Part shown: piece by piece, positions 29,850 to 46,864 of the stretch
Position numbering within the stretch: position 1 is the first letter of the stretch
Layout: every line of letters begins with the position of its first letter
NCBI GenBank assembly: GCA_001179505.1
Contig: CDMY01000613.1
Span: 248,001 to 312,000, forward strand
DNA length: 64,000 nt
Reading direction: 5' to 3'
DNA from: Vitrella brassicaformis CCMP3155
Lineage: Eukaryota; Protista; Chromerida
Position numbers and translations under genes: made by a program
Notes under the pieces: generated by a model
Database searches by the model: none
What the model saw: only the letters and a program-made list of their open reading frames with translations
What the model was told of the DNA's origin: nothing

Positions 29850-30915
29850 TTATGTCTCAAGTGGAGGCACGCCCAGCCCCGACTGCTCCCTTTGTATCTC
29901 GTCAAGCACCGCTTCGGCATCGTCGTCTGCCTTCGGGATGACCTCCACGACCTGATCGAACGTGTAATTCGCCACGTCGTATTGCCACTTGATGAGCTCG
30001 GGATTGGCCAGCACTTCGGCAAGCTCGGCGCCCTGCTTGACGTAGACCGGCCCCTGGACGGTCTTGTCCTCATCAACAACGGCCGACGCGACGATCCCAG
30101 TGTTCTGGTTGAATGTCACGACGCCCAGCTCTTCACTCGTCCCCTCAGGCGTGAGCTGCGGCGCATCTTCTCCTGTGGGGAACTCCAGACCCGCGAAGGA
30201 AGGGCTGGCCGGCAAATTCCCCATCATGTCGTCCGTCACGCCGAGAAAGGCTCCAAGGGCTGCCATGGAGTTGTCTCCCCCAGATGGGTTGAGAGGGGGA
30301 ATGTTCTCCATGTCGATGAGGCCGATAAGGGAGGGACCCTCCTCCGAGATGAGCTCGAAGAAAGCCGCCAGTTCCTCGGGGGGAGGGATTGGCAGGTCTC
30401 CTGGTATTCCTGTCGGGAATGGCGGCAAGTCGCCAAACCCTGGCGGGCCGCCGGGTGGGGTCGGAAATGGCAAGTCGCCAATGCCTGGCGGGCCAGGTGG
30501 CTCTTTCGCCCCCTCCTCTGGCAGCAGGCCCAGGGGGTCCTTGGGGAGGCCCTTCGAATCTTCCTTGGATGGTGGCCCTGGGGGGAAGAAATCTGGTGGC
30601 TCCTTGGCTGGCTCTTGTTCGGGGATGACGACGGCTTGCCAGCCAGCCGGCCGCCTTGCGCTTTCGCCGCGCCCCAGCCTCCGCCTCCTTGCCGGTCTCG
30701 CTGATTGTTGTGGAAGCAGGGAAGGCTCGTTGCTCTGCAGAAGCTTGTTGAGGAAGTCCGGGCATTTGGCTTCCAGCTTTGACCGAAGGGCTGGGATGGA
30801 GGGGTAGGTGACGAACCTCGTGTGGAGGCGGTACGGGACAACGCCGTCCCACCAACGGAGCTTGGGCAGCCTGAAACACAGGACGCCGCACGATAGGCCG
30901 CACTGACAGGAAGAC

Positions 30916-30948
<33 letters not shown>

Positions 30949-33900
30949 ATGAGAGGCACATACATACACACATACATACACACATACATACGGGGAAGGC
31001 AAGTCAAGTGTCATTGCTTGCAAGGCGGTCAATAGGTTGGTAAGTTTCTCCCTCTTTAGTGTCCCGTACCAGTTTGAAGTCGATTGCGGCTGTGACAGGG
31101 CATCCATCCTTGATGAGCTCGACGGGCGCGCACTTGTCATTGCTGGCTTGGTACTCAAGCGGCGCCTCCTCGCAGTGTGACCGCCTTGCGTACACGTGGT
31201 CCACCCACATCCAAGCGCTGCACTTTGGCCGCATGTTGACCTGCGATGCTTCGACTTGCAGCAGGCGCCTGCGTCTCCGTGCAGCGGGCTTGCTGTCCAT
31301 GTAGTCGCTGAGGTACTGGGCACCAATCCTCGCCCCGTTGAGGAAGGTGACGGCGACCTTGCCGCCGATGTTGTCCACATCATCGACTGATTGGATGTTG
31401 AGCGCATCGTCGACGCCCTCATTGACAAAGTCGAGCCCCCCGTTGATCTGCGCCAGGAATGGGTAATCTTCGATCGGGTTGGCCCCTGGCTGCTGCATGA
31501 CACCTTCTGAGAACTGATTCAGCAGCTGACCGGCACCAGTCATGGCCGCCTGGCCCTGGTCGGAGCCCAAGAACTCTGCCACCGCTGCCGCCTCTCCCAG
31601 GTAGCCGAGGTCGTCTCCCTCTCCGGTCTCGCCATTGGCCGCCTGCACAGTGACCTCCCACGTCGCCTCGCCCCTCACGGTCGTCGTGTCGTTGACAGTG
31701 GTCACCCAGCACCGACATATGACATTGTTGTTTGCCCCTTGGTGGCGAAGCTCGTTCTCGTAGAGGATGGTGTCTCCCGTCCTGTATACTCGCATGCCGC
31801 AGCTGCCTTCGCCCTTGAATATCGCTGTGGCGCAGACGTCCCCTCCGAAGTCGTTGGGGTCGGTGAAGATGTCGCTCCTCAGGGTCGCCTTGCACTGTTC
31901 GGTTCCGCTCAGATATGCAGGCCTGCGAAAAAAAGAAAGAAAGGAGCAAGACAGCCAGGAATGCTTTGCGTCATGTCTCGATGCCTAGCTTCCGCTGTAT
32001 GAAAAGAACTGCGCTTACGCGAACGCGCCTTCGTATTGGCCGTTGAGGGCCACTAATGGAATGCAGCACTTCATGCCTTGATTGAAACACTCAACCTTCG
32101 GCCTGCCCGCTACACGCGCATGCGCACACGAGATACAGACGAGAGAGAGACATGTACCAGCCAGAGTACCCATCTATGTGACATACATATATACGGCTGA
32201 TCTCCTTTTGTCTGACTTACATCCTGCGGGAGGCAGGCTCTCCAGTTTGAGGTTGGGGTCCTGGGCAGGCACAGGCAGCCGCTTGACCACGCCTGCGTCC
32301 CTCGCAACCAGTGCCAGCGAAGCCACCTGACCGACATCCACATACTTGGCGACTTCCATGCCCAGATTCAGACCAGTGGACAGCGCCTTTGAGCCAGTCG
32401 ACAGAAGTGCGGGCAGATCCTGGGCGAAGGCACTGTCCCCAGCCAGGGCAGCAGGGAAGGTACCCAAGGGGAACGGGGCTGCGGCTCCAGGGAGGAAGAT
32501 GCCACCGGCATTCGCCAGCCCCCCTGCCAGTCCCCCTGATGCCTGTTCGTTTTGTGCGCCTTGGTCGTTCTGGCACACCGCCGGACCGGACACGGTGCCT
32601 GGGGACGAAAACTGGCCGGTAGGGTTGCTGAAGAGGGTGCACTCGTTGGGCGGCCTGAACGAGAATTTGGTGCAAGCCACGGGAGTCAAGGTCTGCTCGC
32701 AGACGGCCTGGCAGGCGGCTGCTGTGTTGAAAGCCGTCGGTCTGTCGATGACAGTGCCGCCGTCCAGTACAGTGTTGTCCGTAAAGCAGTTCACAGAACC
32801 TGACACGCGTAAGCAGACGCACCGCAGGCACGATGTCAAGTACGCCAGCCGATGAAGTTGTCTGCTTGCTCACCTTGTGGTGCGGCTCCATTCGCTGCGA
32901 CAAGTGCGCTGAGCAATGCTGCAGCCGGATCGTTCTGCTGACCCACTTGCTGCCCCTGTCCGGCACTAATGGCGCCTGCCATTTGCCCCGCCAGCTGTGC
33001 ACCGGCACCAATGATGTCACCGATGGGGATCTCGCTGATGGGGATGCCCTGCAGGCGGCGTCTTCTTACGTCTCTGGCCGACTTTTTGCGCTGCTGGAAG
33101 TTGAACCAGGACTGTGCGTAGTCCTTGAAGAGAGGCATCGCGGGAACCTGGCCTGGCGTGAAGATGCGGCGGTTGCCGCTGAGGAGGGAGGCGAGAAGCA
33201 TGTCGGGCGCTACCATGTCTCCGAGGGCCGCCTGAACCATGGCTGCTGTTCCAAGAACAGACGCCGTCGCCAGGCTGGTGCCTGTGTAGGTAGTCTGTTG
33301 GCCGGATGAGTCCAGGGTGAGCAGACTGCCAGGAGCCCACAGCACGTTCCGTGTGATGAAAGGTATGTTGGTGTAGTCTGTCGGCTTCCCAGTCGCCGCA
33401 TCGATGGAGCACACACAGAGAAGGGCCGCACCGGGGACATCACAGAGGTTCCAGTCCAGGTAATTCTTGAGGCTGACTGGTGTCTTGGAGCCTTGCAGGG
33501 TGGGCAGTGGGGTCGACTGGAGCTGCGGCTGAATGCCTTCGTTGCCGCACGGGATGAAGAATACGTGGCCGAAGCGCGATGCCCTTTGCATGGCCGTCTT
33601 GAGGATGTGGGGTCCGGCTTTGGCCTGCTGTGACGAAGGGAACTCGCCGAACCCAAGGGCGAGGTAAGCCATCGATGCCCTCTGCTGAACAGAGTATTCG
33701 ATGGCCGCCAGCACATCAGCAAGGTCGGCTCCGCCCTTCTCTTCGTCCCAGACTTTCAGCGGCATCGCGAGCGGCGCAATGCCAAAAAGCTTTGCATTGC
33801 AGCCAATGCCCTTCACCGATGTGGTCGTGTCCTTGGTGTCGACCTTGCTGTCGCAGTTGCCGGCATAGAGCACTCCTGCCGCTGTGTCGTGGGTACCCAC

Positions 33901-34917
33901 CCCGCTGGCGAGCGCCTTTGCTTCGCTGTAGCCGCTTCCGCCCTTCTGTGGAGGCTTTGTGAAGTCGTAGCCGACGAAGTCGTCCACGAATCCATTGCCG
34001 TCGTCGTCGATGCCATTGTGGGGGATTTCGCCATTATTGCGAAAGAAGACGTCACCGACCAGCTGGTCGGCCGGCCGGCCCTCCTGCTTTTCCACTTCAG
34101 CCGCCTCCTGCACATTGGCGACTCCCTCCCAAGACGCGCCTCCCAGCTCCCCCATTGACATGGGTGCCATGGCCTCGATGAAGAAGTCCATGCCCGTGCC
34201 GATAAAGGAACTGAGGACCCCCCGCTGTCGCCCGGGAGCTTGATCAGAGCTCGTCTCTGCTCGTCTAGCATATTCTGACCCCTGGTAGGCGTTGAGGACA
34301 TCCTGTAGCGGACCGACCCCGCCGAAGAGCTCGTCAGTGGTCTGGCGGAACCATTGGAAGTCCATGCGCTCGGTTGTCTTTATGTCGCCGCTCGGCCCGT
34401 TGGGGCTGAGAAGGTTTCCCAAGAAGCCGCCTTGGGAGGCTTGCGTCTGGGAGATGCTGGTCATGAGGAAGGACGGCGTACACGTGACCATGTTCTGATA
34501 GGGCCTGAGCAAGTCCCTCAAACAAGCATACTGGGTCTCGTCTCGCACGCTGAAAAGCTCGATGCCAAGCGATGGGAGAAACTGGTTGCTGAATAGCTCT
34601 GGGCACAAAGCAATGCGCCCTCGCCATGCTGACATGAGGTCGTCCAGCAGGCTTACGCGATTGGCGTCGAGGTTGCGTTGTAAGCCGTCGTTGAATAGGC
34701 AGATGACGCGCCTTAGCGGGCCCTGGGAGCCTCCTTTGGACGGTTTGGGACCCTCTTGTGTGCCAGAGGTATCTCTGCCCGGCGGGAACGGGCCACCGAA
34801 TACGGGCGGGGATGGCGATGGAGGCCGCAACGGGAAGAGTTGCCCTGTCGCCGTGATGAACAGACAGAGCGACGCAAGTGTCAGCAGGCAGACACGGGAG
34901 CCCGAGGAAGCAGTCAT
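29850..34917 (-). CDS. Secreted multidomain protein: S8 subtilase (probably inactive) + PAN/Apple domain + ZP-module-like region + Pro-rich/acidic tail
   Basis: Signal peptide MTASSGSRVCLLTLASLCLFITATG. S8 hallmarks NGEIPHNGIDDDGNGFVDDFVGYDF, MPLKV, IPCGN, WAPG and GTSLA. Exons ~34917-32872, 32799-32221, 32173-32158 (16 nt), 31922-~31070 and ~30900-29850 join in frame; the last junction is the least certain. Stop ends at 29850. Confidence 0.75.
32158..32173 (-). other. Predicted 16-nt micro-exon (ATGGGTACTCTGGCTG)
   Basis: Flanked by cacatag| and |gtacatg. It converts the phase-1 donor at 32220 to the phase-2 acceptor at 31923, giving PPAG-YGYSGW-PAYLSG. Skipping it gives an immediate in-frame TGA. 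Confidence 0.65.
32572..32790 (-). other. PAN/Apple domain (six-Cys) within the subtilase gene
   Basis: CFTDNTVLDGG...AAACQAVCEQ...CTKFSF...ECTLFS...GTVSGPAVC matches the Apple-domain Cys spacing and the terminal VSGPxxC motif of apicomplexan microneme proteins such as MIC4. Confidence 0.85.
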
Positions 34918-35974
34918 GATCTGCTCAAGAACAAGCACGCGCAAGCAGTACATCATGACTCGCTGACAGAGGCATTGACATCCTCGTTCATTAATTACCC
35001 GATGTGATGAGATGTCGCGGTCCATTCAACGAGGTGCACGAAGAGGAGAGGACCGAGGAGGAGCTCAAGCGAAGCCGATAGGTCCGCGAACTTGCTTGAT
35101 GATGATCTCGGCCCCACGAGCTCGCAATGGGGCCGAGAAGAGCGGCAACAGATTTGGACAAGACGTACACCTGGGAGTGACGAGCAAATGCCGGAAAGAC
35201 ACACGACTGTCCAACGAAACCGAGGCAAATACTGTTGGCTGGTGAGAGACCGTCAACTAAGTTGGTGTATCCATCATTGCGTCACAAGTAGAGTTGTCTC
35301 CGGCCACTTGCTTGATGGTGTCTACTTGTACTCCGTGGCGACATTATCACGCCATTGGCAGGTCTTGCTTGGTAAGCAAGATCACGAAGCAAGATCTTTG
35401 ATTTTCCAATATACAGCGAACGAACGAGATGCGGCTGAGGCATGCAGTATACTTACGAGAATGGGCTGCTCGGAAGTATACTGTAGAGGAGTAGACACAC
35501 AGTAGTAGAGACGCGATAGAGGAGTAGTAGAGACACGGTATGAAGGTCAGATTAAGCGTGCCATATCCATTTTCAGATTGACCATTCAACATTCATTGAT
35601 CCATTTATCCATCTTGGCAAAGAGGTCCAGAAGTGAATGATTCATTCAATCATCCGTTCATCGCTGACACATCGAAGGTGATTGAGAGCGTGTCAGTGAT
35701 GAGTAAGTGGCAATGCGATATCACACTGGACGTGCGTCACGAGTTTGTTCATCATGACAACATTGACCGAGCGAAGTATTCATGACATGCATCAGAATTA
35801 GAGAAATCCATAGCGCATGATTTGACGAGAAAGCAAAGCAGAAGGCCAATCAAAGGCCCCAAAGCACATCCTCAATGACATGTCTACATCTGTGTACGAC
35901 GGCACGCTGCAGTGACTGCACATGACACGATCGCGAAGCCGCCGCATGGACTCTAGAGACATATGTAGGTCCAG

Positions 35975-38900
35975 CTAGTCTGTGATAATTGTGACGGGTA
36001 TGCTGTCATCACGGAAGTCGACAACGGTCCTATACTCTCCAATCATCGCCTCGACAATACCTTCTGTGGCAACGAAAGCCTCTCCTCGCTGCGCATCCAA
36101 GAAGAGTTTGACGGTCGGCGGCGTGATGGCGCCCAAACCGAGTTTGTAGGGCCTTGTTCTTTTGGTCGTCTTGGCGGGAATGCGCTCCGGATCACTGCGC
36201 CAATCCAGACTCGTTCGGCCAATCTCTCTGATAGTAGATGCACAGCAGTGACAGATTCATGAGCAGACTCCCGCCACAGGGCAGGGGACATTGATTCGTG
36301 TGGTGCATGACGTGTTCATCACTGACTGTCCATCTGCAAACATAGTTGTGTCGATGTAGAGCAGCAGCAGATCAACAGAGAAGGGGTTTTGGACGATGAG
36401 ACGAGAGTTGATGTCCGGGGGCCTGCCTGGAGCTGGCAATGCCTGCGAAGCAGCAGACACGTCAAGCGAGACATCAAGAGAGACATCAAGAGAGACATCA
36501 AGAGAGGTACACACAATGTGTGGCTGACCCCCATGGTGAGTTCTGCGCCCTGCATCAACTCGGCTGTCCCCCCTCCCAGCGCTATCCGTGACTCCCATCG
36601 ACTCAGCGCCTTCTTCAGCAGCTGCACATCCGTGCTGCCCTCACTGCCCTTGAGCACCACAGCAATGTCCTTGCCCGACACATATTGCGATATCACCCGC
36701 CGAGGGCCCTGAGCTTTATCACCCGACACCGTGGGGAATAATCGCACATCAATGGACATCTTCGCCTCTGTGCCGGGGAGCAGGGCCAGCTTGTAGATGG
36801 TGACCTCACCCACGTGCACCAGCGTGTCTCCACTTTCCGCTGGAGGCACCGCTTCCTCGACTGCACGCGGCGTGGCAGCAAGCGAGCCCCCTTCAGCAGA
36901 CATGGGGGGAGGGAAGAGCCGAGGCCGCTCCGGAAGATCCTTCTCGCCAACGTAGATATCCAGCCGCACGTCGCCTAGCTCGGCGCCGAAGGATGCGCCA
37001 CCCTTGAGACCGATCTCTGTGCTCATGATAAGGCCATCAGTCCGGCCACCTGAGACGGTGACGTTTCCTACCGCCAGGGAATCGTCGCTGATGCCACCCA
37101 AGTCTGCAGGGCGAGAGAAAAGCACAGCATATCATCAAGCACCAGCCATAGACGTGCTCAAGCCACTCCTTCTTCTGTCTGTCCGTGTGTGTGAGTGCAT
37201 ACGTTTGAGGTCCTGGTCGATGTTAATGTTGATGCCATCCAGGTTGAGCTCGCCGAGGTTGGTCGCGACCGCAATCGATGCCTGTCCGGCCAAGTAAAGC
37301 CTTGTTGCCCCAGGATCATAAAAGACAGCGGCGAGGAAGTCCTCGAAAGCACTCTCCTCACTCTCTGCGACCACGAGCAGGGCATCATCGAAGACTGCTC
37401 GGAATCGTAAGGGCTCTGGGGCTGAGAGGTCAGCTGTGGTGACGGTGAGCCGGCCGATTTGCACCGGTGCATCTTCAGGTTCGCCGTCCATCTCAGGGAG
37501 AAAGGCACGAGACAGGTCCGTGACCAAAGTGACCCGGATTATCTGAGCCAAAAGGAAAACATCACTTGCTTCTCACTCTCCCTGACTATGCACTAACGTC
37601 AAAGAAAATGTCGATTCCTTCCGGCAGCGCAAGTCCCACCGCCACATCGCCCTGCAGCACGGGGCTATCACCCCCCACAAACGAAATGACCAGGCCGCCG
37701 ATTTCCACGTCCCTCAGGAAAGACATTCCCGTGCTCGTGAGGAGAGATATTTTCAAGGATATTGCCATCTCTATCGCAGATATGGCCTGCTTCACCCAGT
37801 AGGGAGTCGGGGAGTCGTCTTTCTCCGCCCCCTTAAGTGTAATCGCAACGTCATCACCTGACACGACCGACGTCATCAGGCTGGCCGCCGTAGGGAGGTC
37901 AGTGTACCCGGGGGTGAGCTCTCCGACGATGTTAAGGTTGTTGCCGCCTGAGCTGAGTCTGAGATTGGGTGCGGTGAGACGGGCAAGGGGCTTGTCGTCG
38001 ACATAGGCATCGAGTTTGGCGGTCCCAATATCCATGTAGGCTATCAAGGGACCCGTCCGCCCCACCGACTCTGCCCCACCGACCTGCAGGTTGACGGCCG
38101 CGTCGAGCTGTAGGCCATCACTCGCATCAGACAAGCCCCAATTTTGCAGTCCTCCCTCATCGACACCGACACCAAGGCCGGAGAGAGTGATTTCATTGCG
38201 GAAGGGAAGATCGTACACGTAAATGCGGCCAAGGTCGGACATGACGGAGGCTTCTACCGTCCCATAGACGGTGAGGGGGAGGCCTCCCTCTCGCTTCGCC
38301 TTCCCTCCCACAAGGTCGGCAGCCAGAGCACCGAAAGCCCTCCCTTTGTCGGGGAAGATGAGATCCGTATCCTTGAAGGATAGAATAGCGACCTGCCTGC
38401 CGCCTGAGGATTCAGTGGTGACGTCCACGAGGCCGGTGTCCGCATATCCAATCAGATCGTCGCTCTGATTGAGCTTCATGATCACCCGGACCTGCTGCAC
38501 TGTGATAGGTAAGTCAGGCCCTAAAGGCGATTCAACCCCTGCTCGCACAATAGCTTCGAACATAACGGCATCATTCACAGAATCGTCGCTCCCGCGTCGT
38601 GCAGTGATGCCAATGTCCGAGACACGGACGTCACCAAAAGCCCCACCGCTGTCTCCGACCACATCTATGTCGACCTCAATTGCCTGGGCCACCTGCTGCA
38701 GCCACTCCGGGCTTGCCCGCCATGAAGCGGTGTCCTCTAGACGGATGGACTTACCCACCAGCTTCAGAGCTGCCGGTTTACCCCCAATGTACTGCGATAC
38801 GAACGAGTCGAGAGCGTCGCGGTCGCTGCCAGTCGTCGGCCGAACAAGTGAGCCCACTACTGCCATCTTGTTGGCGCCTCCCTTGAGTGCCAGCGGCTTC

Positions 38901-41900
38901 AAGCTGATGTCTCCAAGAATACTGCGTATGGCGTTCTGCCCGGGCGGCATATGTGTCACGTCAAAGACGGTAGTGCCGAAGTTGAGGCTTAACGGGAAGG
39001 ACTCTGGCAGGGCGAGATCTAGAGTTGAGACAATGCCAAGTCCGGTCCGGCCGGGGGGAGGATCACCGAACTGAATCTTGTCCAGTGAGGCGCTGGATAG
39101 GTCAATGGACCCAGCGTCGTCTCCCAACAAGGGCAAAATAGTCTCAAGAGGCATTTTTCCGATAGGCAGGGTGCCAAGAATGCTGCCAACCGTCACTGCG
39201 GCTGCACCGACAAGCTGCAGCGTAAGCTGCTGTGCTGACGGCCGGTCTTCCGATAGTAGCAACTTGACCAGGTCGGCAAATGCCTTGCCGTCTTCCTCTA
39301 CCTTCAGTGTGCCCTCAAACTCCCAGCGGATGTTGAGATGGTTTGTGTTGACGCCTGTCTCCCTGTTCATGAGCACTGCAGTCTGTGGTGGCACACGAAG
39401 AACGCCGATCTTCTTGCCATTTGGCCCTTGAAGATTGCCATTGATGGCGAGCTCTTGCACATCGAGACGGGAATCTGGCCCAAGCGGATCTCTGACCCTA
39501 ACCACTAGGGCCCCCCTGAGCTGCACATCGTCGTCCCCAACAGGCTCCAAGCTCAGAGACGAGGCGTCTACCGACTCGACAAGGGAGTCGCCACCCAAGA
39601 TGCTGAAACACGAGAAGGAAGGAATGAAGTGTTCCATGTACCATTGAGACTGATCAGCTCACCCAGTAGTCGGCATGGATAATGCGACGCCACTGAGCAC
39701 CCGGGTCAGCCAAACAGGCGGTCTCTGCCTCATGGACCTTGGCATGATTTTTATCGTCGCCATGTCATCGCTGCCGAAGAGCGCATTCACCAGCTCGCCA
39801 AAGAATGCCTCAGAGTCCACCCCCTGGGGCGACTGCAGCATGCCCCTGACCTCCAGACGCGACTCCTTTGGCGCTGGCGCCAGGTTGGTTTCCATTGTTC
39901 TGAAATCGCCTATCCTTTGCGTGGTCCCGCCGACGTCCCGCTGTACAATCCACTGCATATCGGCAAGTCCCAGGCCAATTGGCGCAGGATTGCGGATAGT
40001 CAGTGCCACCGAGATCACCATTCCGTTCGCACTCTCGCCGGACTGCTGCAATGACCGCGGCCCGCCTTCTTGTGGCTGAGGTTGCAAAAAGCCTGGTGCG
40101 ATGGGAGTATCGGAGCCCGAGGGGAAGAGAAATTCCTCGATCGTCAGATTGTGCATCTCGAACAGAGACGTGGCGGCATCTCCCTCGTCTCCTGAGCCCC
40201 CCATGGACAGCTCCCTATCGATCTCCACTTCGCCCAATTGCAAGCGGCCTAATGGGGTGTCGACAGTAGCATCTATCCTCCCGACTAACCGAACAACATC
40301 AACAGTGCCAGATGATGTCTCCTCGCCGACAGAATCGAAGATCCTCTGTTTGAAGGTCACGAAAGTGTCGAGATCGTCCACTACGAGGGGGACGGAGAGC
40401 GGGACCGTCACGGCAAGTCGGCTAGAGCCATCACTCTGAAGGAGACACAATGAGGCAGATGAAGTCCCGCCTTCTGTCGGAGGGTTTCTGCTTACACCAT
40501 TGACGTATCTCCTATCCTCCGTCTTGACGGGTGGAGACTCGATCCTCCCTAACACAGGCGCATCGTTTCTTGCTCCATTCACCAGTGAAAGAGACATCGC
40601 CACAGATTCGATCACAATGTCCTGAGATGAGCCCAAAGGGTTGTTGATCACGACGTCAAATGAGCCCTCCATGGGAATGGCAGACAGCTCAGCACCGTCC
40701 TGCACTTCGTCGAAGCGCAAATACAAGTCCTGGGTCTCAACCGATTCAATCAATTCTCCCCCACGGATAGACTCCGTCAAGCTGTCTAGGCTGAACGAAG
40801 AATTCCCCGCACAAATGAAGCCAGGAGACAGACAGATCACGAGGTGTATGGAATGACATGCGTCTCTTATGACCTTGTCATGGTCGTATCGAATTTCACG
40901 CCCTCCGCTACTTTCGTCACCCAGGCCGGCAGCATCTCTTGTTCCCCGCTACTGGTCCCGACAGGGTAGCCTAGTCGCACCCCTTCCAGTCCAATTCTCA
41001 AAGGGGTGGCTGCCAGAGCCGCCTGTATCAACTCCTGAGCTTGCCTCTCGTTGGCCTCTGTGCGCCATAGGTAGCCCCTAAGCCGCACTTGGTTGTCGCC
41101 CGGCTCGAGTACAAAAGGTGTGTTAATCTCCAGTGCACCGACGTCTTGGTTGCCATATCTCAATGCGCCCAACAGGGTCAGTTTGCCGAAGTCGATCGTC
41201 AACGCGAGGGTTGACGTCAGTGTGATGGCAATCTCTGTCGCAAGCTTGCTCTGAAGGACCGCCACTCTGCCGTATTCCCCAAAAACATTCGCCATTTCGA
41301 GGGCCGTAAGGTTGTCGAAGTCCTCGACGAGACGAAAGTCATCCACACTGACCTGAAGGCTTTCTTTTTGCTGACCATCCTCTGCCTCGCCAGACAGATC
41401 GAAATTTGAAGTTACACGTAATCCGTCGAGGTTCAGCCGGCCCAGTGGAGTCTGCACGTCGACTCTGGCACTACCTTGGATGCCAAGAGGGGCGGCAATC
41501 GTGGTCGTACGCTCCATGAGGCTGCTGACAGTATCGGCAAATAGCGATCCATCTCCCGTGGGGCTGAGAATGCCCTGCAGGGGGAAATCAAGACGGATCT
41601 TGCCGTTGTCGAGCACCTGCATGGACCGACCGACACACAAACTGGACACACTTCCATCCTACAATGTCAGATTGTTATCGGTGTCAGTTCACAACTCGCC
41701 TTCTGTTCGATCGCAAGGATCTTCGTCTGCTGTTTGACTTCAGCGAAGCACTCCCCGCGTCTCGACAGTAGATTAGCACTCAACTCGAGGTTTTCGACCG
41801 TCACGGGCGACCGTTCCCCCAACGGGTTGACAATGATTACCCCCACCTCAGCTACAACACTTATGGCTCGCTGTGGCTCTGTCAGGCCTCCTAGATCAGC

Positions 41901-44900
41901 CTGGAGACCGCGTATCGACACGTCCTCGACCAATTCACCTCCACCCGTCAAATCGCTCAGTGGGGGAAGCTTCGTCTCGATGGCCACCGTGCTCAATGCC
42001 TCCTCAAGCCACTTCGGCGGCCCTCTTTCTTGCACAAAGGGCACTGTCTTGACGATCACGGGAAGATTGCCGCCTTTGACATACTCGCTGAAACGCCGAG
42101 ACACAACGGCTAGGTCCGAGGCTGCCGGGTTGAGTCTCCCGGTGAGCTTGATGGGCGTCCTGCCTGGGCGCAGGTAGACCGCTCTTGCCTGCACGATGCC
42201 AAGCAGCACAGCCAAAGCCCGTGCCTGCAGCAGACGTCTGGCGGGATTGGCAGGGCCAGCGTCACTGGAAGGTGGCAGGTACAGTTCGAAGGAGAGGTCA
42301 CCCAAATATAGCGATGCCTCCGATGGGTTGAGGATGTCTGCCGTCGCCGAGATAGCAAGTCCCTGATCGTCCGGCGGTGGCCCCTCAAAGACGAACGAAT
42401 TCAGGTCGACCGATATGCCCTCGCTCTCCTGGCTGCCCATTGGGAGTGTCATATCGAGAGGTATGGCCGACAGCTGCAGGGGAATATCAAAGTATGTCCG
42501 ATCCCCATCGTCATTGACAGTGGCGCTGACGTCGATGTTCATTTCCGCCGTTCCACTCATCCGCAGCAAGGCATAACCCTCCCGAGCAAGGTCGGACACG
42601 AAAGCTGCGAACGGTATGGTCAGGCCTGGCTCGCGAAGGGCTGCATTGTCCAATGCGAGAGCCTCCCTCTCGAGAGTGATGGTGTCATTGATCTGGAAAA
42701 GCAGTCTGAGCTTGTCGTTGCCGTCCACTTGCTTAACCTCTTGGACTAGAGGAGCGCGGCTAGAGAGAATCAGGCGACCGATGGTGAATGAGGGAGAGTC
42801 CTCGCTCTCTCGATAATAGAGTGTGGAGTTGATGGAGACGTTGCGGACGGCGAAGGGCACGTCGGGGCCGAAGGGCCTGATGGCGGTGGCGTCAAGGACA
42901 CCTGAGATGATGATGGTGTCTTCATCCACCGGCTCCAGCGACAGGTTGAGAACGTCCACATCTTCCAAGAGCTCATCGCCCAGGCCACTACGAGAAAAGA
43001 CACACACACACACCAGAGGAGCATTTGTGTGTTCCTGATGAGTGTGTGACTACATCTTCAATTGGTGCGTACCCAGCCAGACTAAATTCCAATGCCAGCT
43101 GATCGACTATCGAACCCAGCCATGGAGGCATCTTCGTTTGCGTGCCTTGCTTGTCGTCATGGCCAGTCACTTGGATGGGCAGCGATCGACCCTGAAACAA
43201 ACCTTGTACCAATCTGCTCATCTCCTCCGGCACAGTAGACGCTTGCGCGTGCTCATCCGCCGCTATCGGACCTTCCAGGCGTAGCCGAGACACGTCTGGT
43301 GCTGGCACGATGGTGGGAGACACCATCTTCAGATCGCCGCGAAGGGCCAGTGATTTGAGGTATACATGCAGCGGTAGATCCAGGTCATCGAATATCACGC
43401 CGAACTCCGAAGGGTTCGCTACAGCAACGTCAATCAAGACCTCCATCGTGAGGTCTTTCGTCGCATACGAGCCCCCCGGTCCCCGAAACGGCGATGACGG
43501 GTTGATCTCCAGCTTCGTGACTTCGAACATGACGAGCTTAGGCCCTAGGCTGTCGAAGAGATTACCTGGCGGGAGGGATGTGACCTCGTCCACCGGCAGG
43601 TTGGAAAGGTCGAGGCGACCAATGGGCGTATCGACGCTTGCTGATACATTGGCGTTGATAATCAGCCCGACAGGTGCATTCGAAGCTCTCCCACCGAACA
43701 GAGTGTCTGTGGCAAAGGAAACAATTGTGTCGCCGCTCCCGATAAGGACCATATCGCCGATGAGTGGCATGCGTATAGCCAGGTTGTCTGGTGTGCTGGC
43801 GTTCATCATGATGGCCTTGCTGGGGTATGTATTGACGCGCGTGAGAGGGCTGCCGTCGGACCCGCTGATGGTAGCGGCCAGACTGTAAGTCTCCACAATC
43901 ACCTGCTGTCCTCGAAGGGGGTTCTGAATCTCGACGTCGAGGGTGATATTCAGTGCCAGCCGATCAGCGATCTCACTGATGGTGACAGTCACGCTGTCGT
44001 ACTCGAGACTTTGCACCAGCTCTGAGACACAGCCCGCCGTCTCACTTGTCTTTTTGGTCAGCTCGCACAGGGGTGGAAGCGTGGTGATGGTCTCGAAGGA
44101 GGACACAGCGTCATAAAACCATTGAGGCCGGCTTGGAATCCTCTCTGAAAAAGTCCACAGTGCGCCCTTCGGTGGCTGGACGATCGCCACTCGCAAAGAC
44201 AGAGGCTCCTCGCGCAGATAGGCTGAAAGCCCTTTAGAGACTGCAGGTAGGTCACTCTCGTCAGGCCTCAAGCGTCCCTCGAGAGCTAGTGTGTTGTTGC
44301 CTGGCATGATGTTGACATTGTACGCCACCAGGTAGCCGAGGAAAGCCGCGCTCTGGAGACGTCTCCCTCTCGACAACTGTGCATCGCCCTCCAGTGTGAT
44401 TTCAAAGGCAAGGTCCCCCAGCGAGATTGACGCGTCTGAAGGGTTGATCAGCGTGGCGTTGGCAGCAAGGTCAAGTGCATCTTCCTTGCTGGTGGATACA
44501 AAGTCGAAAGCCGACAACTCGATCGCCAGACCTTTATCGGCCCCACCTTCGCCGGTGTTGCTTCCCAGGCCCGTGAGCTCCTGTGCTGTCTCGATGGTCA
44601 GGTTGGGAAGAATAAGTGGCCCCAGTGCGGTTTCCAGTCGCACTTCAGCGGCACCTTCCTTGATCAACATAGAGACCGACGGCTCAGTCAGGAATGCTCT
44701 GGTGAAGGCGCTGAAGGGCTTCCCATTCTCTGTTAGCGTCATAGTGCCATCGAGGTCGAACTCCAATGGCCTCTCAGCAGACAGGTGGCGGCCCGCGTAT
44801 GGGTATCCAATATAGCTGGACGTCTGCTTGACGATTAAGCTGGACGCAACGTACGGGCCATTGCCATTCAGCCAATCGTACTTGGACATGTCTGCCGCAA

Positions 44901-46864
44901 ACACGCACTGGCAATGCACACAGTCTATTGGTTATCCCTCTGCAAATGCTCTGTTTACTTGGAGGCGAGTCGCCACGTGCGACTGGCTTGAGAAGGGCGC
45001 GCAGCTTGGCGATGCATGGCTCTCCTGCCGCATTGCCGTCATGGATGGAAGCGGTCATATTCACCTATGTAGCAGAGCACACCAGCAGCTTTGATGATGC
45101 GAATTAAACCCCTTGCTTTTCTTCTCTCTTTCCCTCCTTGCTTTCCCTCTCACCTGATCGACATCTATCGGAGAGTTTTCCCCCAAGGGATTCTCGAACA
45201 CCACCTCTACCCTGCCACCAAGGCCAACCGTCGTGCCGCTCGCAGTCGATGGTTGGTCATCCGGGGTTAGGTCGATCCGCAGGCCTTCGAAGGATAGAGA
45301 TTTGAACACGCCACCCAGGTTGGGCAGAGGACCGATCGATGGAGAGACCTCCAGTGCTTCGACAGCAGCTGTGATGTCGATACACACACACATGAAAATC
45401 GTCTTCTGATCAGCACAGCCCTCACATCTTTCTCCTTGACCCCCTCTGGCCGTGGCTTACTTACAGTTGAAGACTGTCTTGGTCGTCCCGTTGCCGTCCA
45501 CAATCACATTTTCTGGAAATGCGCCGTCAACCACGGCCGCCACAAATTTACTGATCACCCCCGCCCTCTCCGGAGACCCCTCCCCGGCCACAACCACCTC
45601 CAGCTTTCCGTTCATCTGCCACTTGTTTTGTCCTGGCTGTATGGACGCCTGGCTGGCTTTAAGGGATCCGACAGAGATGCCTTTGTAGACAAGGCTGAGA
45701 CTGACGTCGCCGAGCTGGTTGATAGTCAGCTTAGAGGCAGACTCGAATTGGGCGGTGAAGGAGATGTCGACCCCGCCGGAAACCTTGTCACTGCCGTCCA
45801 TTCTGATGTTTCCGGTACTAAAGTTCGTCAGAGCTGAGCCCAAGGATGATCCCATTGCTGCACACCGAGTACACATGAAGCCAGAATACATGTAAGAGCT
45901 TCTGTCTCGCTATGTTGTTGAATCGGTCACCATCGGCGTCCAGCGTCCTGTCGAATTCCAGGTCTGATATGCCGATCTTGATCCCAATCAAAGTGATGTG
46001 CACTGTGAAGGGCTTAGGAGCCACCACACGCCACGTCGGCCGGCTCCCATCGCCACTTTCTCGAACCAGCTGTGCGGTAAAGCGATTCCACGCATCGATG
46101 TCCGTGATGGTGAAGGAGGTGTTGAAGGCAAGCGCGGATCGGCTGCCCTTGAGCCGCATCTTTGGCATGGTAAACCTGCCGAGTCTGCTCTCACCGCTCG
46201 CCTCCACTCCATACGTGTCCAGCGAGAGTGGTGGCAAATCGGCCTCTATGTCCGAACCGAAACTGCTGCGGCGAAGCTCGGCATCGATCTTAATGTAAAA
46301 GCCGTCTTGTCTCGGTGCGGTGATATTGATGCTGTCGATGGCCAGCTCACTCGATCCAATGACTGACTCGACGATAGGCTTCAGGCCGACAGTAAAGAAA
46401 AGTGCCAGACCCACACCCATCAGCAGAAGCAAAGCCACGGCCACAATGGCCGATATACATAAGCAGCGCTGCCATCGATTGCCTCGAAGCGGCCGCGTCA
46501 GCCAAGCAATGACTGAGCCGCCTAGTCTCTTCTTCCCGGAGGGGGAGAGTTCGGTGCGCGAGGATGGAGCAGGTTGCGGGCTCCGTGGCGTAGATGATGG
46601 TGATGACGGCTGACCGGCTTCCAATCTGGATCTGCCCGTGCACGGAGAGGGGGTCGCGGCCGAGCGGTTGGCTGCAGGGCTGGCCGCTGCTGGGGCTGCG
46701 GCTGATCTTGCCCAGGACGTGAAGTTGAGGACGCGTTGGACGACAGATGCGCTGACCGTGGTATTTGTCCGCCCAGTTGATCCCGCATCGTCATCTGTTC
46801 TCAATGCGCTCATGGGGGATGGCTTTGGCGAATGAGTCTCCTGAAATTCAGCAGGCTGACTCAT
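35975..46864 (-). CDS. Giant type II membrane protein (about 3,300 aa) built of tandem DUF3712/Tag1-like (LEA_2-related) beta-rich modules
   Basis: ATG 46864 and an N-terminal TM (CISAIVAVALLLLMGVGLALFFTVGL). Then IVESVIGSSELAIDSINIT...LGRFTMP...FTITDIDAWNRFTAQLV, and recurring NPS/NPL, LGDL, F.+.+SQY+.G and PxWL..A+ motifs. Long exons with short GT-AG introns. Last exon ends EYRTVVDFRDDSIPVTIITD* (35975). Confidence 0.75.
36469..36507. repeat. Short 12-bp tandem repeat (GAGACATCAAGA, about 3 copies) in an intron
   Basis: Directly visible; lies inside the predicted intron near the 3' end of the DUF3712 gene. Confidence 0.8.

What the first reader, a model, noticed from the sequence alone, without database searches (positions are those of the whole stretch)
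32872..34917. Subtilase domain with a broken catalytic triad (probable pseudoprotease) heading the Apple-ZP protein
Seen: the Asp motif VAVIDTG reads SSFIGTGMDF (Gly at 34198-34200). The His motif GHGTHVAG reads SGVGTHDTAAG (Val at 33898-33900 in the His position, or a shifted HDT). Ser (GTSLA, 33274-33276), the oxyanion Asn (PCGN) and the Ca-binding DDDGNGFVDD loop are kept. Established: S8A activity needs Asp-His-Ser. Inference: a non-catalytic binding or scaffold domain, or an inhibitor/decoy for active subtilases. Signal peptide + dead S8 + RRRRLQ + Apple + ZP-like is an architecture I do not recognise from any described protein.
Basis: partly seen in the sequence, partly recalled or inferred. 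Interest (0 to 1): 0.7.

Follow-up and report, generated by a model that had tools for sequence, protein, structure and literature searches.

The report
Ancient dead subtilase on alga protein
The first exon of this Vitrella gene encodes a subtilisin-shaped domain that has lost its catalytic aspartate, and relatives in Cryptosporidium, gregarines and other apicomplexans share that loss, so it is an old, conserved non-enzyme module and not a one-off oddity.

Summary
All motifs sit at the stated coordinates on the minus strand, inside an intact 729-codon reading frame (exon 1 ends at 32874).

- **Fold.** The domain is a true subtilase (S8) homologue: hhalign against 30 active subtilases gives E 2e-25, and structural alignment to deseasin gives Z 27.
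- **Catalytic residues.** Gly276 occupies the column where 65 of 65 active homologues have the catalytic Asp. Val376 occupies the His column. His379, three residues on, leaves an unresolved alternative register. Ser584 and Asn495 are kept.
- **Relatives.** The protein is not an orphan. Proteins from Cryptosporidium muris and C. canis, Cardiosporidium, two Selenidium species and Rhytidocystis show the same order of parts: signal peptide, N-terminal domain, dead S8 domain, PAN/Apple domain, Cys-rich tail. All that cover the site have Gly there. Most have also lost His, Ser and Asn, and Pfam no longer recognises their S8 domain. Vitrella is the least decayed member and shows where the family came from.
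- **Propeptide.** A propeptide-like N-terminal domain is predicted by AlphaFold only.
- **Function.** Most likely this is a non-catalytic structural or binding module that cannot process itself. Its actual function is inferred, not shown.
- **Literature.** I found no paper describing this family.
- **Earlier notes.** Other notes of this scan had already flagged the Asp-to-Gly change and the ZP-like part on this same stretch.

The parts
32874..34917 (-). Exon 1 from the likely start Met37 to the donor site. It encodes the signal peptide, linker, N-terminal domain, dead S8 domain, basic motif and a Gly/Ala/Gln-rich tail.
   Evidence: Open frame 35025..32836. CAAG|GTGAGC donor at 32873/32872.
34843..34917 (-). 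Predicted signal peptide, aa 37-61. A basic n-region, a 13-residue hydrophobic core, and A-T-G before the likely cut.
   Evidence: Read from the translation. No signal-peptide predictor was available. The relatives also begin with hydrophobic leaders.
34450..34716 (-). N-terminal domain, aa 104-192, predicted beta-alpha-beta-beta-alpha-beta like a subtilase I9 propeptide. It carries Cys residues conserved across the family (ICLF ... [DT]C).
   Evidence: AlphaFold model 2 secondary structure, pLDDT about 70-88. Z 23-24 matches that span this part plus the S8 part to unprocessed pro-subtilisin E 3whi and pro-Tk-subtilisin 2e1p. Not supported by Pfam or by hhalign.
33127..34368 (-). Subtilase (S8) fold domain, aa 220-633.
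34198..34200 (-). Gly276 in the position of the catalytic Asp (subtilisin Asp32), at the end of the first core strand.
   Evidence: Column is D in 65/65 active homologues and G in all six family members that cover it. Both models end the strand at aa 276.
33979..34008 (-). DDDGNGFVDD calcium-loop motif. Kept nearly identical to the bacterial consensus here and not recognisable in the apicomplexan relatives.
   Evidence: Nearly invariant columns. The apicomplexan hits align only from query residue 369 onward.
33898..33900 (-). Val376 in the column of the catalytic His (subtilisin His64).
   Evidence: MAFFT with 65 active homologues. hhalign.
33889..33891 (-). His379. By sequence alignment it matches the second His of GHGTH. 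In the alternative register it is the catalytic His, shared as HDTA with Selenidium serpulae.
   Evidence: The helix starts at aa 378-379 in both models, with local pLDDT about 45-62.
33541..33543 (-). Asn495, the retained oxyanion-hole Asn.
   Evidence: Column is N in 64/65 active homologues. The family reads N N N D D D D.
33274..33276 (-). Ser584, the retained catalytic-position Ser in GTSLA.
   Evidence: Column is S in 64/65 active homologues. The family reads S G G A Y S G.
33049..33066 (-). RRRRLQ basic motif after the S8 domain. An R-x-L-[Q/E] core recurs at the aligned place in four of the seven family sequences aligned.
   Evidence: Family alignment: Vitrella RRRRLQG, S. pygospionis SRRLEG, S. 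serpulae RRSLQE, Cardiosporidium SRSLQV.
32800..32873 (-). Intron 1, 74 nt, GT..AG, phase 1.
   Evidence: Sequence reading. The frame continues into the Apple-like exon.
32573..32791 (-). PAN/Apple-like domain at the start of exon 2.
   Evidence: BLASTP to the Pfam-confirmed PAN of Selenidium pygospionis P0014: E 6e-6, 32% identity. Pfam on the Vitrella piece alone is only a faint PAN_4 hit, E 0.15.

Best explanation
Exon 1 encodes the N-terminal module of a secreted multidomain protein. The module has the full layout of a pro-subtilase: leader, a probable propeptide-like domain, then an S8 catalytic-type domain. It lacks the catalytic Asp, which is Gly276, and by sequence alignment also lacks the catalytic His, which is Val376.

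It is the chromerid member of a family shared with Apicomplexa. In that family the Asp-to-Gly change is universal, and the other catalytic residues have been lost repeatedly, while the fold, several cysteines and family-specific motifs stay conserved.

The module is therefore most likely non-catalytic. It would work as a folded structural or binding domain at the head of a PAN/Apple plus Cys-rich (ZP-like) extracellular protein.

Inferred steps, not shown:
- Without a working triad it cannot cut off its own propeptide. It would stay in a locked pro-form, as CspC of Clostridioides difficile does.
- It may be separated from the Apple-ZP part by another protease at the conserved basic R-x-L motif.
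For: S8 homology:
- hhalign E 2.1e-25.
- All top Foldseek hits are subtilases.
- VIA-align Z 27.2 to 3vv3.

Triad columns:
- Asp: family G G G G G - G, against 65/65 D.
- His: family V Q Q A E H F, against 65/65 H.
- Ser: family S G G A Y S G, against 64/65 S.
- Asn: family N N N D D D D, against 64/65 N.

Gly276 lies at the end of the first core strand in both models, with block pLDDT 74-81 in model 1.

The relatives are real homologues with the same domain order:
- phmmer E 2.5e-13 to 1e-8.
- Names and taxa.
- PAN domain downstream in all.
- The Vitrella PAN aligns to theirs.

An apicomplexan-only profile still matches active subtilases: hhalign E 4.5e-13, and 24 solved subtilases with best E 6.9e-8.

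The domain is conserved without catalysis: 36 invariant columns and 41% mean column identity across six deep apicomplexan lineages.

The gene is maintained. It has an intact 729-codon frame, whereas a second Vitrella copy (L001) is 5'-truncated, frameshifted and carries deletions. dN/dS between the two is 0.38 over 330 codons.

Pro-form layout: matches spanning model residues 9..539 to unprocessed pro-subtilisin E and pro-Tk-subtilisin.

Precedent: CspC keeps an uncleaved prodomain because its triad is degenerate (PMC6636752). PIMMS2 is a subtilisin-like pseudoenzyme in Plasmodium (PMC5520436).
Against: - Ser584, Asn495 and a His at +3 are retained in Vitrella. S. serpulae also keeps a Ser, and a His in GHDTA. 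So a residual Ser-His chemistry cannot be excluded.
- Both AlphaFold models start the His helix at aa 378-379. That would put His379 near the catalytic position, though local pLDDT is only about 45-62.
- No coordinates were available, so I could not measure geometry or look for a substitute acidic residue.
- The propeptide assignment rests on AlphaFold runs whose alignment contained bacterial propeptides. Pfam and hhalign see no I9 similarity.
- The binding or structural role is inference from precedent, not from any test.
Confidence: 0.75

Rival explanations
1. The domain is a divergent but still active protease. Ser584 and His379 would work as a dyad, or with an acidic residue recruited from elsewhere, at least for a single self-processing cut.
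For: - Ser584 and Asn495 are retained, and the GTS motif is intact.
- HDTA is shared with S. serpulae GHDTA, whose His aligns to the catalytic His column.
- The helix starts at aa 378-379 in both models.
- The calcium loop is strongly conserved, as in working enzymes.
Against: - No Asp at the Asp32 position in any family member.
- hhalign and MAFFT both place Val376, not His379, in the His column.
- In five of the seven family sequences Ser is replaced by Gly, Ala or Tyr, and His by Gln, Ala, Glu or Phe, while the domain stays conserved. So the family's function does not need catalysis.
- From memory, not checked here: replacing Asp32 in subtilisin lowers kcat by about four orders of magnitude (Carter and Wells 1988, cited in PMC5520436).
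Confidence: 0.1
2. The module acts as a decoy or inhibitor of active subtilases. It could do so through a released propeptide-like domain or by binding their substrates.
For: - Subtilase propeptides are potent inhibitors of their cognate enzymes, and a free-standing propeptide-like inhibitor of SUB1 is known in Plasmodium (PMC6993865, listed).
- A propeptide-like fold is predicted here.
- Another note of this scan reports many subtilase loci in this genome (not checked).
Against: - No sequence similarity of the N-terminal domain to I9 propeptides.
- The module is always fused to PAN and Cys-rich extracellular modules. That points to a role within that protein, not to a free inhibitor.
- Nothing tested here bears directly on inhibition.
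Confidence: 0.1
3. The reading frame is a decaying or mis-modelled gene with no function.
For: - A degraded duplicate exists elsewhere in the Vitrella assembly.
- No RNA evidence could be collected.
- This exact protein did not appear in the protein libraries.
Against: - A 729-codon open frame in 60% GC DNA, and clean GT..AG splicing into a conserved PAN exon.
- dN/dS of 0.38.
- Orthologues across Apicomplexa.
- Another follow-up of this scan calls the gene transcribed (not checked here).
Confidence: 0.04

Closest known systems
Uncharacterised apicomplexan proteins: Cryptosporidium muris CMU_016980 (XP_002140295.1), C. canis KAJ1606442.1, Cardiosporidium cionae IE077_001636, and transcriptome proteins of Selenidium pygospionis, S. 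serpulae and Rhytidocystis pertsovi
   Same: Same order of parts: leader, Cys-containing N-terminal domain, S8-derived domain with Gly at the Asp position (motif [NS][AS][FI][IVM]G[TAS][GD][FM]), a PAN domain, and a long Cys-rich tail. phmmer E 2.5e-13 to 1e-8 against the Vitrella exon.
   Different: The apicomplexan members have lost the calcium loop, and mostly also His, Ser and Asn. Pfam does not detect S8 in them. Vitrella keeps the loop, Ser584 and Asn495, and lacks part of their GCDC...FPDG.ACP cysteine pattern.
CspC and CspA pseudoproteases of Clostridioides difficile (S8 family)
   Same: A subtilase fold with a degenerate triad, a retained uncleaved prodomain and a non-catalytic role (PMC6636752).
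   Different: They are bacterial spore proteins with a jelly-roll insertion. They keep Asp and lack His and Ser, the opposite pattern to Vitrella. They have no PAN or ZP-like partners and no close sequence relationship to this family.
Plasmodium PIMMS2 (subtilisin-like pseudoenzyme on the ookinete surface)
   Same: An alveolate surface protein with an S8-like domain. Its triad residues are variably missing among orthologues and are not essential for function (PMC5520436).
   Different: Its architecture is leader, S8-like domain, transmembrane segment and C-terminal extension. It lies between SUB1 and SUB3 and is known only from Plasmodium. It has no PAN or Cys-rich tail. I had no sequence to compare it directly.
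Active subtilases with the DDDGNG calcium loop: deseasin MCP-01 (3vv3) and Plasmodium SUB1 (4tr2, 8coz)
   Same: Best structural matches, Z 26-27. They share the calcium-loop motif, the oxyanion Asn and the GTS motif.
   Different: They have a complete Asp-His-Ser triad and process themselves.

Membership tests
Peptidase family S8 (subtilases), as a homologue | Subtilisin alpha/beta fold and significant profile similarity | tested here: met
   - Pfam PF00082: 23.8 bits against a cut-off of 21.8.
- hhalign E 2.1e-25.
- All Foldseek top hits are subtilases.
- VIA-align Z 27.2, rmsd 2.8 A over 276 residues.
Peptidase family S8, as an active peptidase | Catalytic Asp (subtilisin Asp32) at the end of the first core strand | tested here: not met
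   Gly276 sits in a column that is D in 65/65 active homologues. The strand ends at aa 276 in both models.
Peptidase family S8, as an active peptidase | Catalytic His (His64) at the start of the following helix | tested here: inconclusive
   MAFFT and hhalign put Val376 in the His column. His379 is three residues on, and both models start the helix at aa 378-379 with low pLDDT. No coordinates were available to measure geometry.
Peptidase family S8, as an active peptidase | Catalytic Ser (Ser221) in GTSxA and oxyanion Asn (Asn155) | tested here: met
   Ser584 and Asn495 fall in the conserved columns.
Peptidase family S8, as an active peptidase | Proteolytic activity or self-processing of the propeptide | not testable with these tools
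   Needs recombinant protein.
Subtilase propeptide (inhibitor I9) | Beta-alpha-beta-beta-alpha-beta domain docked on the catalytic domain, with sequence similarity to PF05922 | tested here: inconclusive
   Topology and docking are predicted. Pfam gives no hit even at E 10. hhalign against 44 bacterial propeptides gives probability 0.1%. The AlphaFold alignment held bacterial propeptides, so the model may lean on them.
Alveolate dead-S8 plus PAN family (CMU_016980-like) | Gly at the Asp position within the shared motif, significant similarity of the S8-derived domain, and a PAN domain directly downstream | tested here: met
   - Motif SSFIGTGMDF against NAFIGTGFD.
- phmmer E 2.5e-13 to P0008.
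- PAN alignment E 6e-6.
Alveolate dead-S8 plus PAN family (CMU_016980-like) | Family cysteine pattern GCDC...FPDG.ACP after the His region | tested here: inconclusive
   Vitrella has AGNCDS...GIGCN, with two of the cysteines and a longer loop. The later cysteines, LCD and LCVCS, are kept.

The most novel reading that the evidence does not exclude
The dead subtilase could be an ancient cap, older than the Apicomplexa and locked in its pro-form, that controls assembly of the ZP-like polymerising part of the protein. It would hold the protein inert during secretion. An ASP5 / plasmepsin V-type or convertase-type protease would then cut it off at the conserved R-x-L-[Q/E] motif. That would parallel the way animal ZP proteins are released for polymerisation by cleavage. 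If so, a pseudoenzyme would be a built-in assembly switch for an extracellular matrix protein shared by free-living chromerids and parasites.
Probability: 0.1. Interest if true: 0.75.

Novelty: new variant of a known kind. Interest (0 to 1): 0.5.

Why it matters
Subtilase pseudoenzymes are known from a few cases, such as CspC/CspA and PIMMS2. This one marks a whole family kept from the common ancestor of chromerid algae and apicomplexan parasites, always attached to PAN and Cys-rich extracellular modules.

The Vitrella copy is the least decayed member. It identifies an otherwise unrecognisable N-terminal domain of Cryptosporidium and gregarine surface or secreted proteins as a former subtilase. 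That gives a handle for annotating those proteins.

It also raises a testable question: what does a protease fold do once catalysis has been gone for hundreds of millions of years?

It does not overturn anything, and the function remains inferred.

Tried and rejected
1. Word-index protein searches added no named relatives. The Vitrella exon gave only six weak bacterial subtilases. The Selenidium domain and a seven-sequence family alignment each found only the query itself. So I could not check for Toxoplasma, Plasmodium or Chromera members. The Toxoplasma relative mentioned in another note is unverified here.
2. NCBIfam gave only a far sub-threshold mycosin hit.
4. A sequence test of the propeptide idea failed.
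5. Cluster look-up of the closest active subtilases returned unnamed metagenome proteins, so I could not name the source lineage of the domain.
6. The chromerid genome paper does not mention subtilisin or Apple domains in its main text. Searches combining apicomplexan, subtilisin-like and pseudoenzyme returned only PIMMS2 and unrelated papers.
7. I rejected an unrecognised intron as the cause of the missing Asp. The motif around Gly276 and the residues after it are conserved in the apicomplexan relatives.
8. The joined, spliced protein was not searched.
Full report
**1. What is in the sequence**

The minus strand between 35025 and 32836 is one open frame of 729 codons.
- SSFIGTGMDF, with Gly276 at 34198-34200
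- DDDGNGFVDD, aa 340-349
- SGVGTHDTAAG, with Val376 at 33898-33900 and His379 at 33889-33891
- PCGN, with Asn495
- GTSLA, with Ser584 at 33274-33276
- RRRRLQ, aa 654-659

The likely start is Met37 at 34917, followed by a typical signal peptide. This is my reading of the translation, as no predictor was available.

The exon ends at 32874 with a CAAG|GTGAGC donor. After a 74-nt intron, the frame continues at 32799 into a Cys-patterned Apple/PAN-like domain.

**2. Is it really a subtilase?**

Yes.
- Pfam PF00082 passes its gathering score narrowly and covers only the His-to-Ser part.
- The only solved structure found by sequence is deseasin MCP-01.
- The exhaustive phmmer search gave 523 hits at E<=1e-3, nearly all ordinary bacterial subtilases.
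- hhalign of aa 226-650 against a profile of 30 of them gives probability 99.7%, E 2.1e-25 and 35% identity over 225 columns.
- An AlphaFold model of aa 226-650 (mean pLDDT 73.6, pTM 0.76) finds only subtilases with Foldseek.
- A second model of aa 95-660 (pLDDT 71.1, pTM 0.77) aligns to deseasin at Z 27.2, 2.8 A over 276 residues, and to Plasmodium SUB1 at Z 26.

Both models were built with alignments rich in active subtilases, so they lean towards that fold. The sequence statistics stand on their own.

**3. The catalytic positions**

I aligned the Vitrella domain with six relatives and 65 active subtilases (alignment A2) and read the key columns.

| Position | Active homologues | Vitrella |
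|---|---|---|
| Asp32 | D in 65/65 | Gly276 |
| His64 | H in 65/65 | Val376 |
| Asn155 | N in 64/65 | Asn495 |
| Ser221 | S in 64/65 | Ser584 |

Gly276 closes the first core strand in both models (aa 270-276 and 271-276). Block pLDDT there is 74-81 in model 1 and 77-78 in model 2. That is where Asp32 sits in subtilisin, a point I take from established knowledge of the fold. The loss of Asp is therefore solid.

The His position is less clear.
- MAFFT and hhalign both read GVGTH-DT-AAG against GHGTH--VAG. Val376 then sits at the catalytic His, His379 at the second His, and DT is an insertion.
- The four residues HDTA are shared with Selenidium serpulae GHDTA, whose His falls in the catalytic column.
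- Both models begin the helix at aa 378-379. That would place His379 near the catalytic position.
- Local pLDDT there is only about 45-62, and the tools return no coordinates.

**4. It is not an orphan**

Below a 108-aa fragment, the strongest hits of the exhaustive search were long eukaryotic proteins that align from the His region onward. The cluster look-up names them:
- Cryptosporidium muris CMU_016980
- three C. canis 'signal peptide-containing' proteins
- Cardiosporidium cionae IE077_001636
- transcriptome proteins of Selenidium pygospionis, S. serpulae and Rhytidocystis pertsovi

They share the Vitrella order of parts:
- a leader
- an N-terminal domain with conserved Cys (ICLF ... [DT]C)
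- a motif [NS][AS][FI][IVM]G[TAS][GD][FM] matching SSFIGTGM
- a well-conserved block from the His region to beyond the Ser helix
- a PAN domain, recognised by Pfam in five of the six scanned, all but C. muris
- a long Cys-rich tail

The Vitrella exon-2 Apple-like piece aligns to the S. pygospionis PAN with all cysteines matched, E 6e-6.

In these relatives the catalytic columns read as follows:

| Column | Six relatives |
|---|---|
| Asp | G G G G - G |
| His | Q Q A E H F |
| Asn | N N D D D D |
| Ser | G G A Y S G |

Pfam sees no S8 domain in any of them. An apicomplexan-only profile still matches active subtilases:
- hhalign probability 97.9%, E 4.5e-13
- 24 solved subtilases and nothing else, best E 6.9e-8
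- language-model features also point to S8

Across these six deep lineages the domain keeps 36 invariant columns and 41% mean column identity. A conserved fold with freely decaying catalytic residues is the classic mark of a pseudoenzyme kept for another role.

Because every member has Gly at the Asp position, the simplest history is one loss before chromerids and apicomplexans split. This is inference, as no tree was built.

Vitrella is the least decayed member. It alone keeps the calcium-loop motif almost identical to the bacterial consensus, and with S. serpulae it keeps Ser.

Small residues (S, G, A) dominate the Ser column. Retention of Ser may therefore reflect packing and not chemistry (inference).

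**5. The part in front of the S8 domain**

Model 2 predicts aa 105-190 as beta-alpha-beta-beta-alpha-beta with pLDDT about 70-88. Chains of unprocessed pro-subtilisin E (3whi, Z 24.2, 329 residues aligned) and pro-Tk-subtilisin (2e1p, Z 23.2) align across model residues 9..539. That span covers the N-terminal and S8 domains together.

This suggests a retained propeptide docked as in pro-enzymes. The support is weak outside AlphaFold:
- Pfam finds no I9 match even at E 10.
- hhalign of the family's N-terminal region against 44 bacterial propeptides finds nothing.
- The alignment fed to AlphaFold contained those bacterial propeptides.

I rate this part at about even odds.

**6. Is the gene alive?**

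The 108-aa top hit (CEM33779.1 of Vitrella brassicaformis CCMP3155) led to contig CDMY01000791.1. That contig carries a second, partial copy of this gene. It is 76-90% identical in DNA to window 34009..29937. It lacks the 5' third, carries two deletions, and switches frame three times within the subtilase part.

Against that decayed copy, the window gene has kept its full frame. dN/dS between the two is 0.38 over 330 codons. Since one partner is visibly decaying, this points to real constraint on the other.

Another follow-up of this scan calls the gene transcribed, which I did not check.

**7. How it most likely works**

Shown:
- an S8 fold without its catalytic Asp
- conservation across chromerids and apicomplexans
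- constant fusion to PAN and Cys-rich extracellular modules

Inferred:
- The module does not cut peptide bonds. It serves as a folded structural or binding domain.
- Lacking a triad, it cannot remove its own N-terminal domain and stays in a pro-like state, as shown for CspC of C. difficile (PMC6636752).
- It may be separated from the rest by another protease at the basic motif. The aligned position reads RRRRLQG in Vitrella, SRRLEG and RRSLQE in the two Selenidium species, and SRSLQV in Cardiosporidium.
- That R-x-L core resembles the PEXEL/TEXEL sites cut by plasmepsin V and ASP5 (role of these enzymes: PMC8540915). It equally fits a dibasic convertase site. This is a lead only.

**8. Comparison with what is known**

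- It is a homologue of family S8. It fails the membership test for an active peptidase at the Asp position.
- CspC/CspA are bacterial, keep Asp and lose His and Ser, and have a jelly-roll insertion.
- PIMMS2 is Plasmodium-specific, has a transmembrane segment, and has no PAN domain or Cys-rich tail (PMC5520436).
- Its true family is the set of uncharacterised apicomplexan proteins listed above.
- In the open literature I could search, I found no description of that family. UniRef's automatic name for three of the relatives is 'subtilisin', so automated pipelines have noticed the domain.

**9. Verdict**

The pseudoprotease reading is supported for the Asp, probable for the His, and strengthened by comparison with relatives. 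The 'unrecognised architecture' is in fact a conserved but undescribed alveolate family.

This is a new variant of a known kind, of moderate interest.

Other notes of this scan had already flagged the Asp-to-Gly change and the ZP-like part on this same stretch.

The joined spliced protein was not searched. Exons were treated separately by reference.

Noticed in passing
L001:5017-7728 (Vitrella brassicaformis CCMP3155, CDMY01000791.1), matching window 34009..29937: A second, decayed copy of this gene. It is 5'-truncated: it starts inside the calcium loop and has no leader, N-terminal domain or Gly276 region. It is 76-90% identical in DNA, has two deletions, and switches frame three times in the subtilase part. 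The assembly annotates a 108-aa piece of it as CEM33779.1.
   Followed up: partly
window 33049-33066, and the aligned sites in P0014, P0157 and P0012: The basic motif after the dead S8 domain has a conserved R-x-L-[Q/E] core in Vitrella, both Selenidium species and Cardiosporidium. It resembles the PEXEL/TEXEL sites cut by plasmepsin V / ASP5, and also a dibasic convertase site.
   Followed up: partly
window 33979-34050: The calcium-loop stretch (NNGEIPHNGIDDDGNGFVDDFVGYDF) is close to the bacterial consensus, while the rest of the domain is about 25-30% identical to active subtilases. The apicomplexan relatives have lost it. Why a dead domain keeps this loop so well is unexplained.
   Followed up: no
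window 36319-44919, minus strand: The upstream neighbour looks like one very large multi-exon gene of long repetitive beta-rich ORFs. Two of them hit Pfam DUF3712: one at E 3.9e-8, the other a weak hit at E 0.001 below the gathering score. The rest have no family match.
   Followed up: partly
window 29850-31007 and 30236-30985, minus strand: Short tandem repeats that translate as runs of MYVC or CLSV lie between the coding blocks downstream of the ZP-like part. They are probably intronic microsatellite-like sequence.
   Followed up: no
P0016 (Cryptosporidium canis KAJ1606442.1): Its 90% cluster also holds about 200-aa TRAPP subunit 5 / '41-2 antigen' proteins of several Cryptosporidium species. 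The C. canis gene model has probably fused the dead-subtilase gene with its TRAPP neighbour.
   Followed up: no
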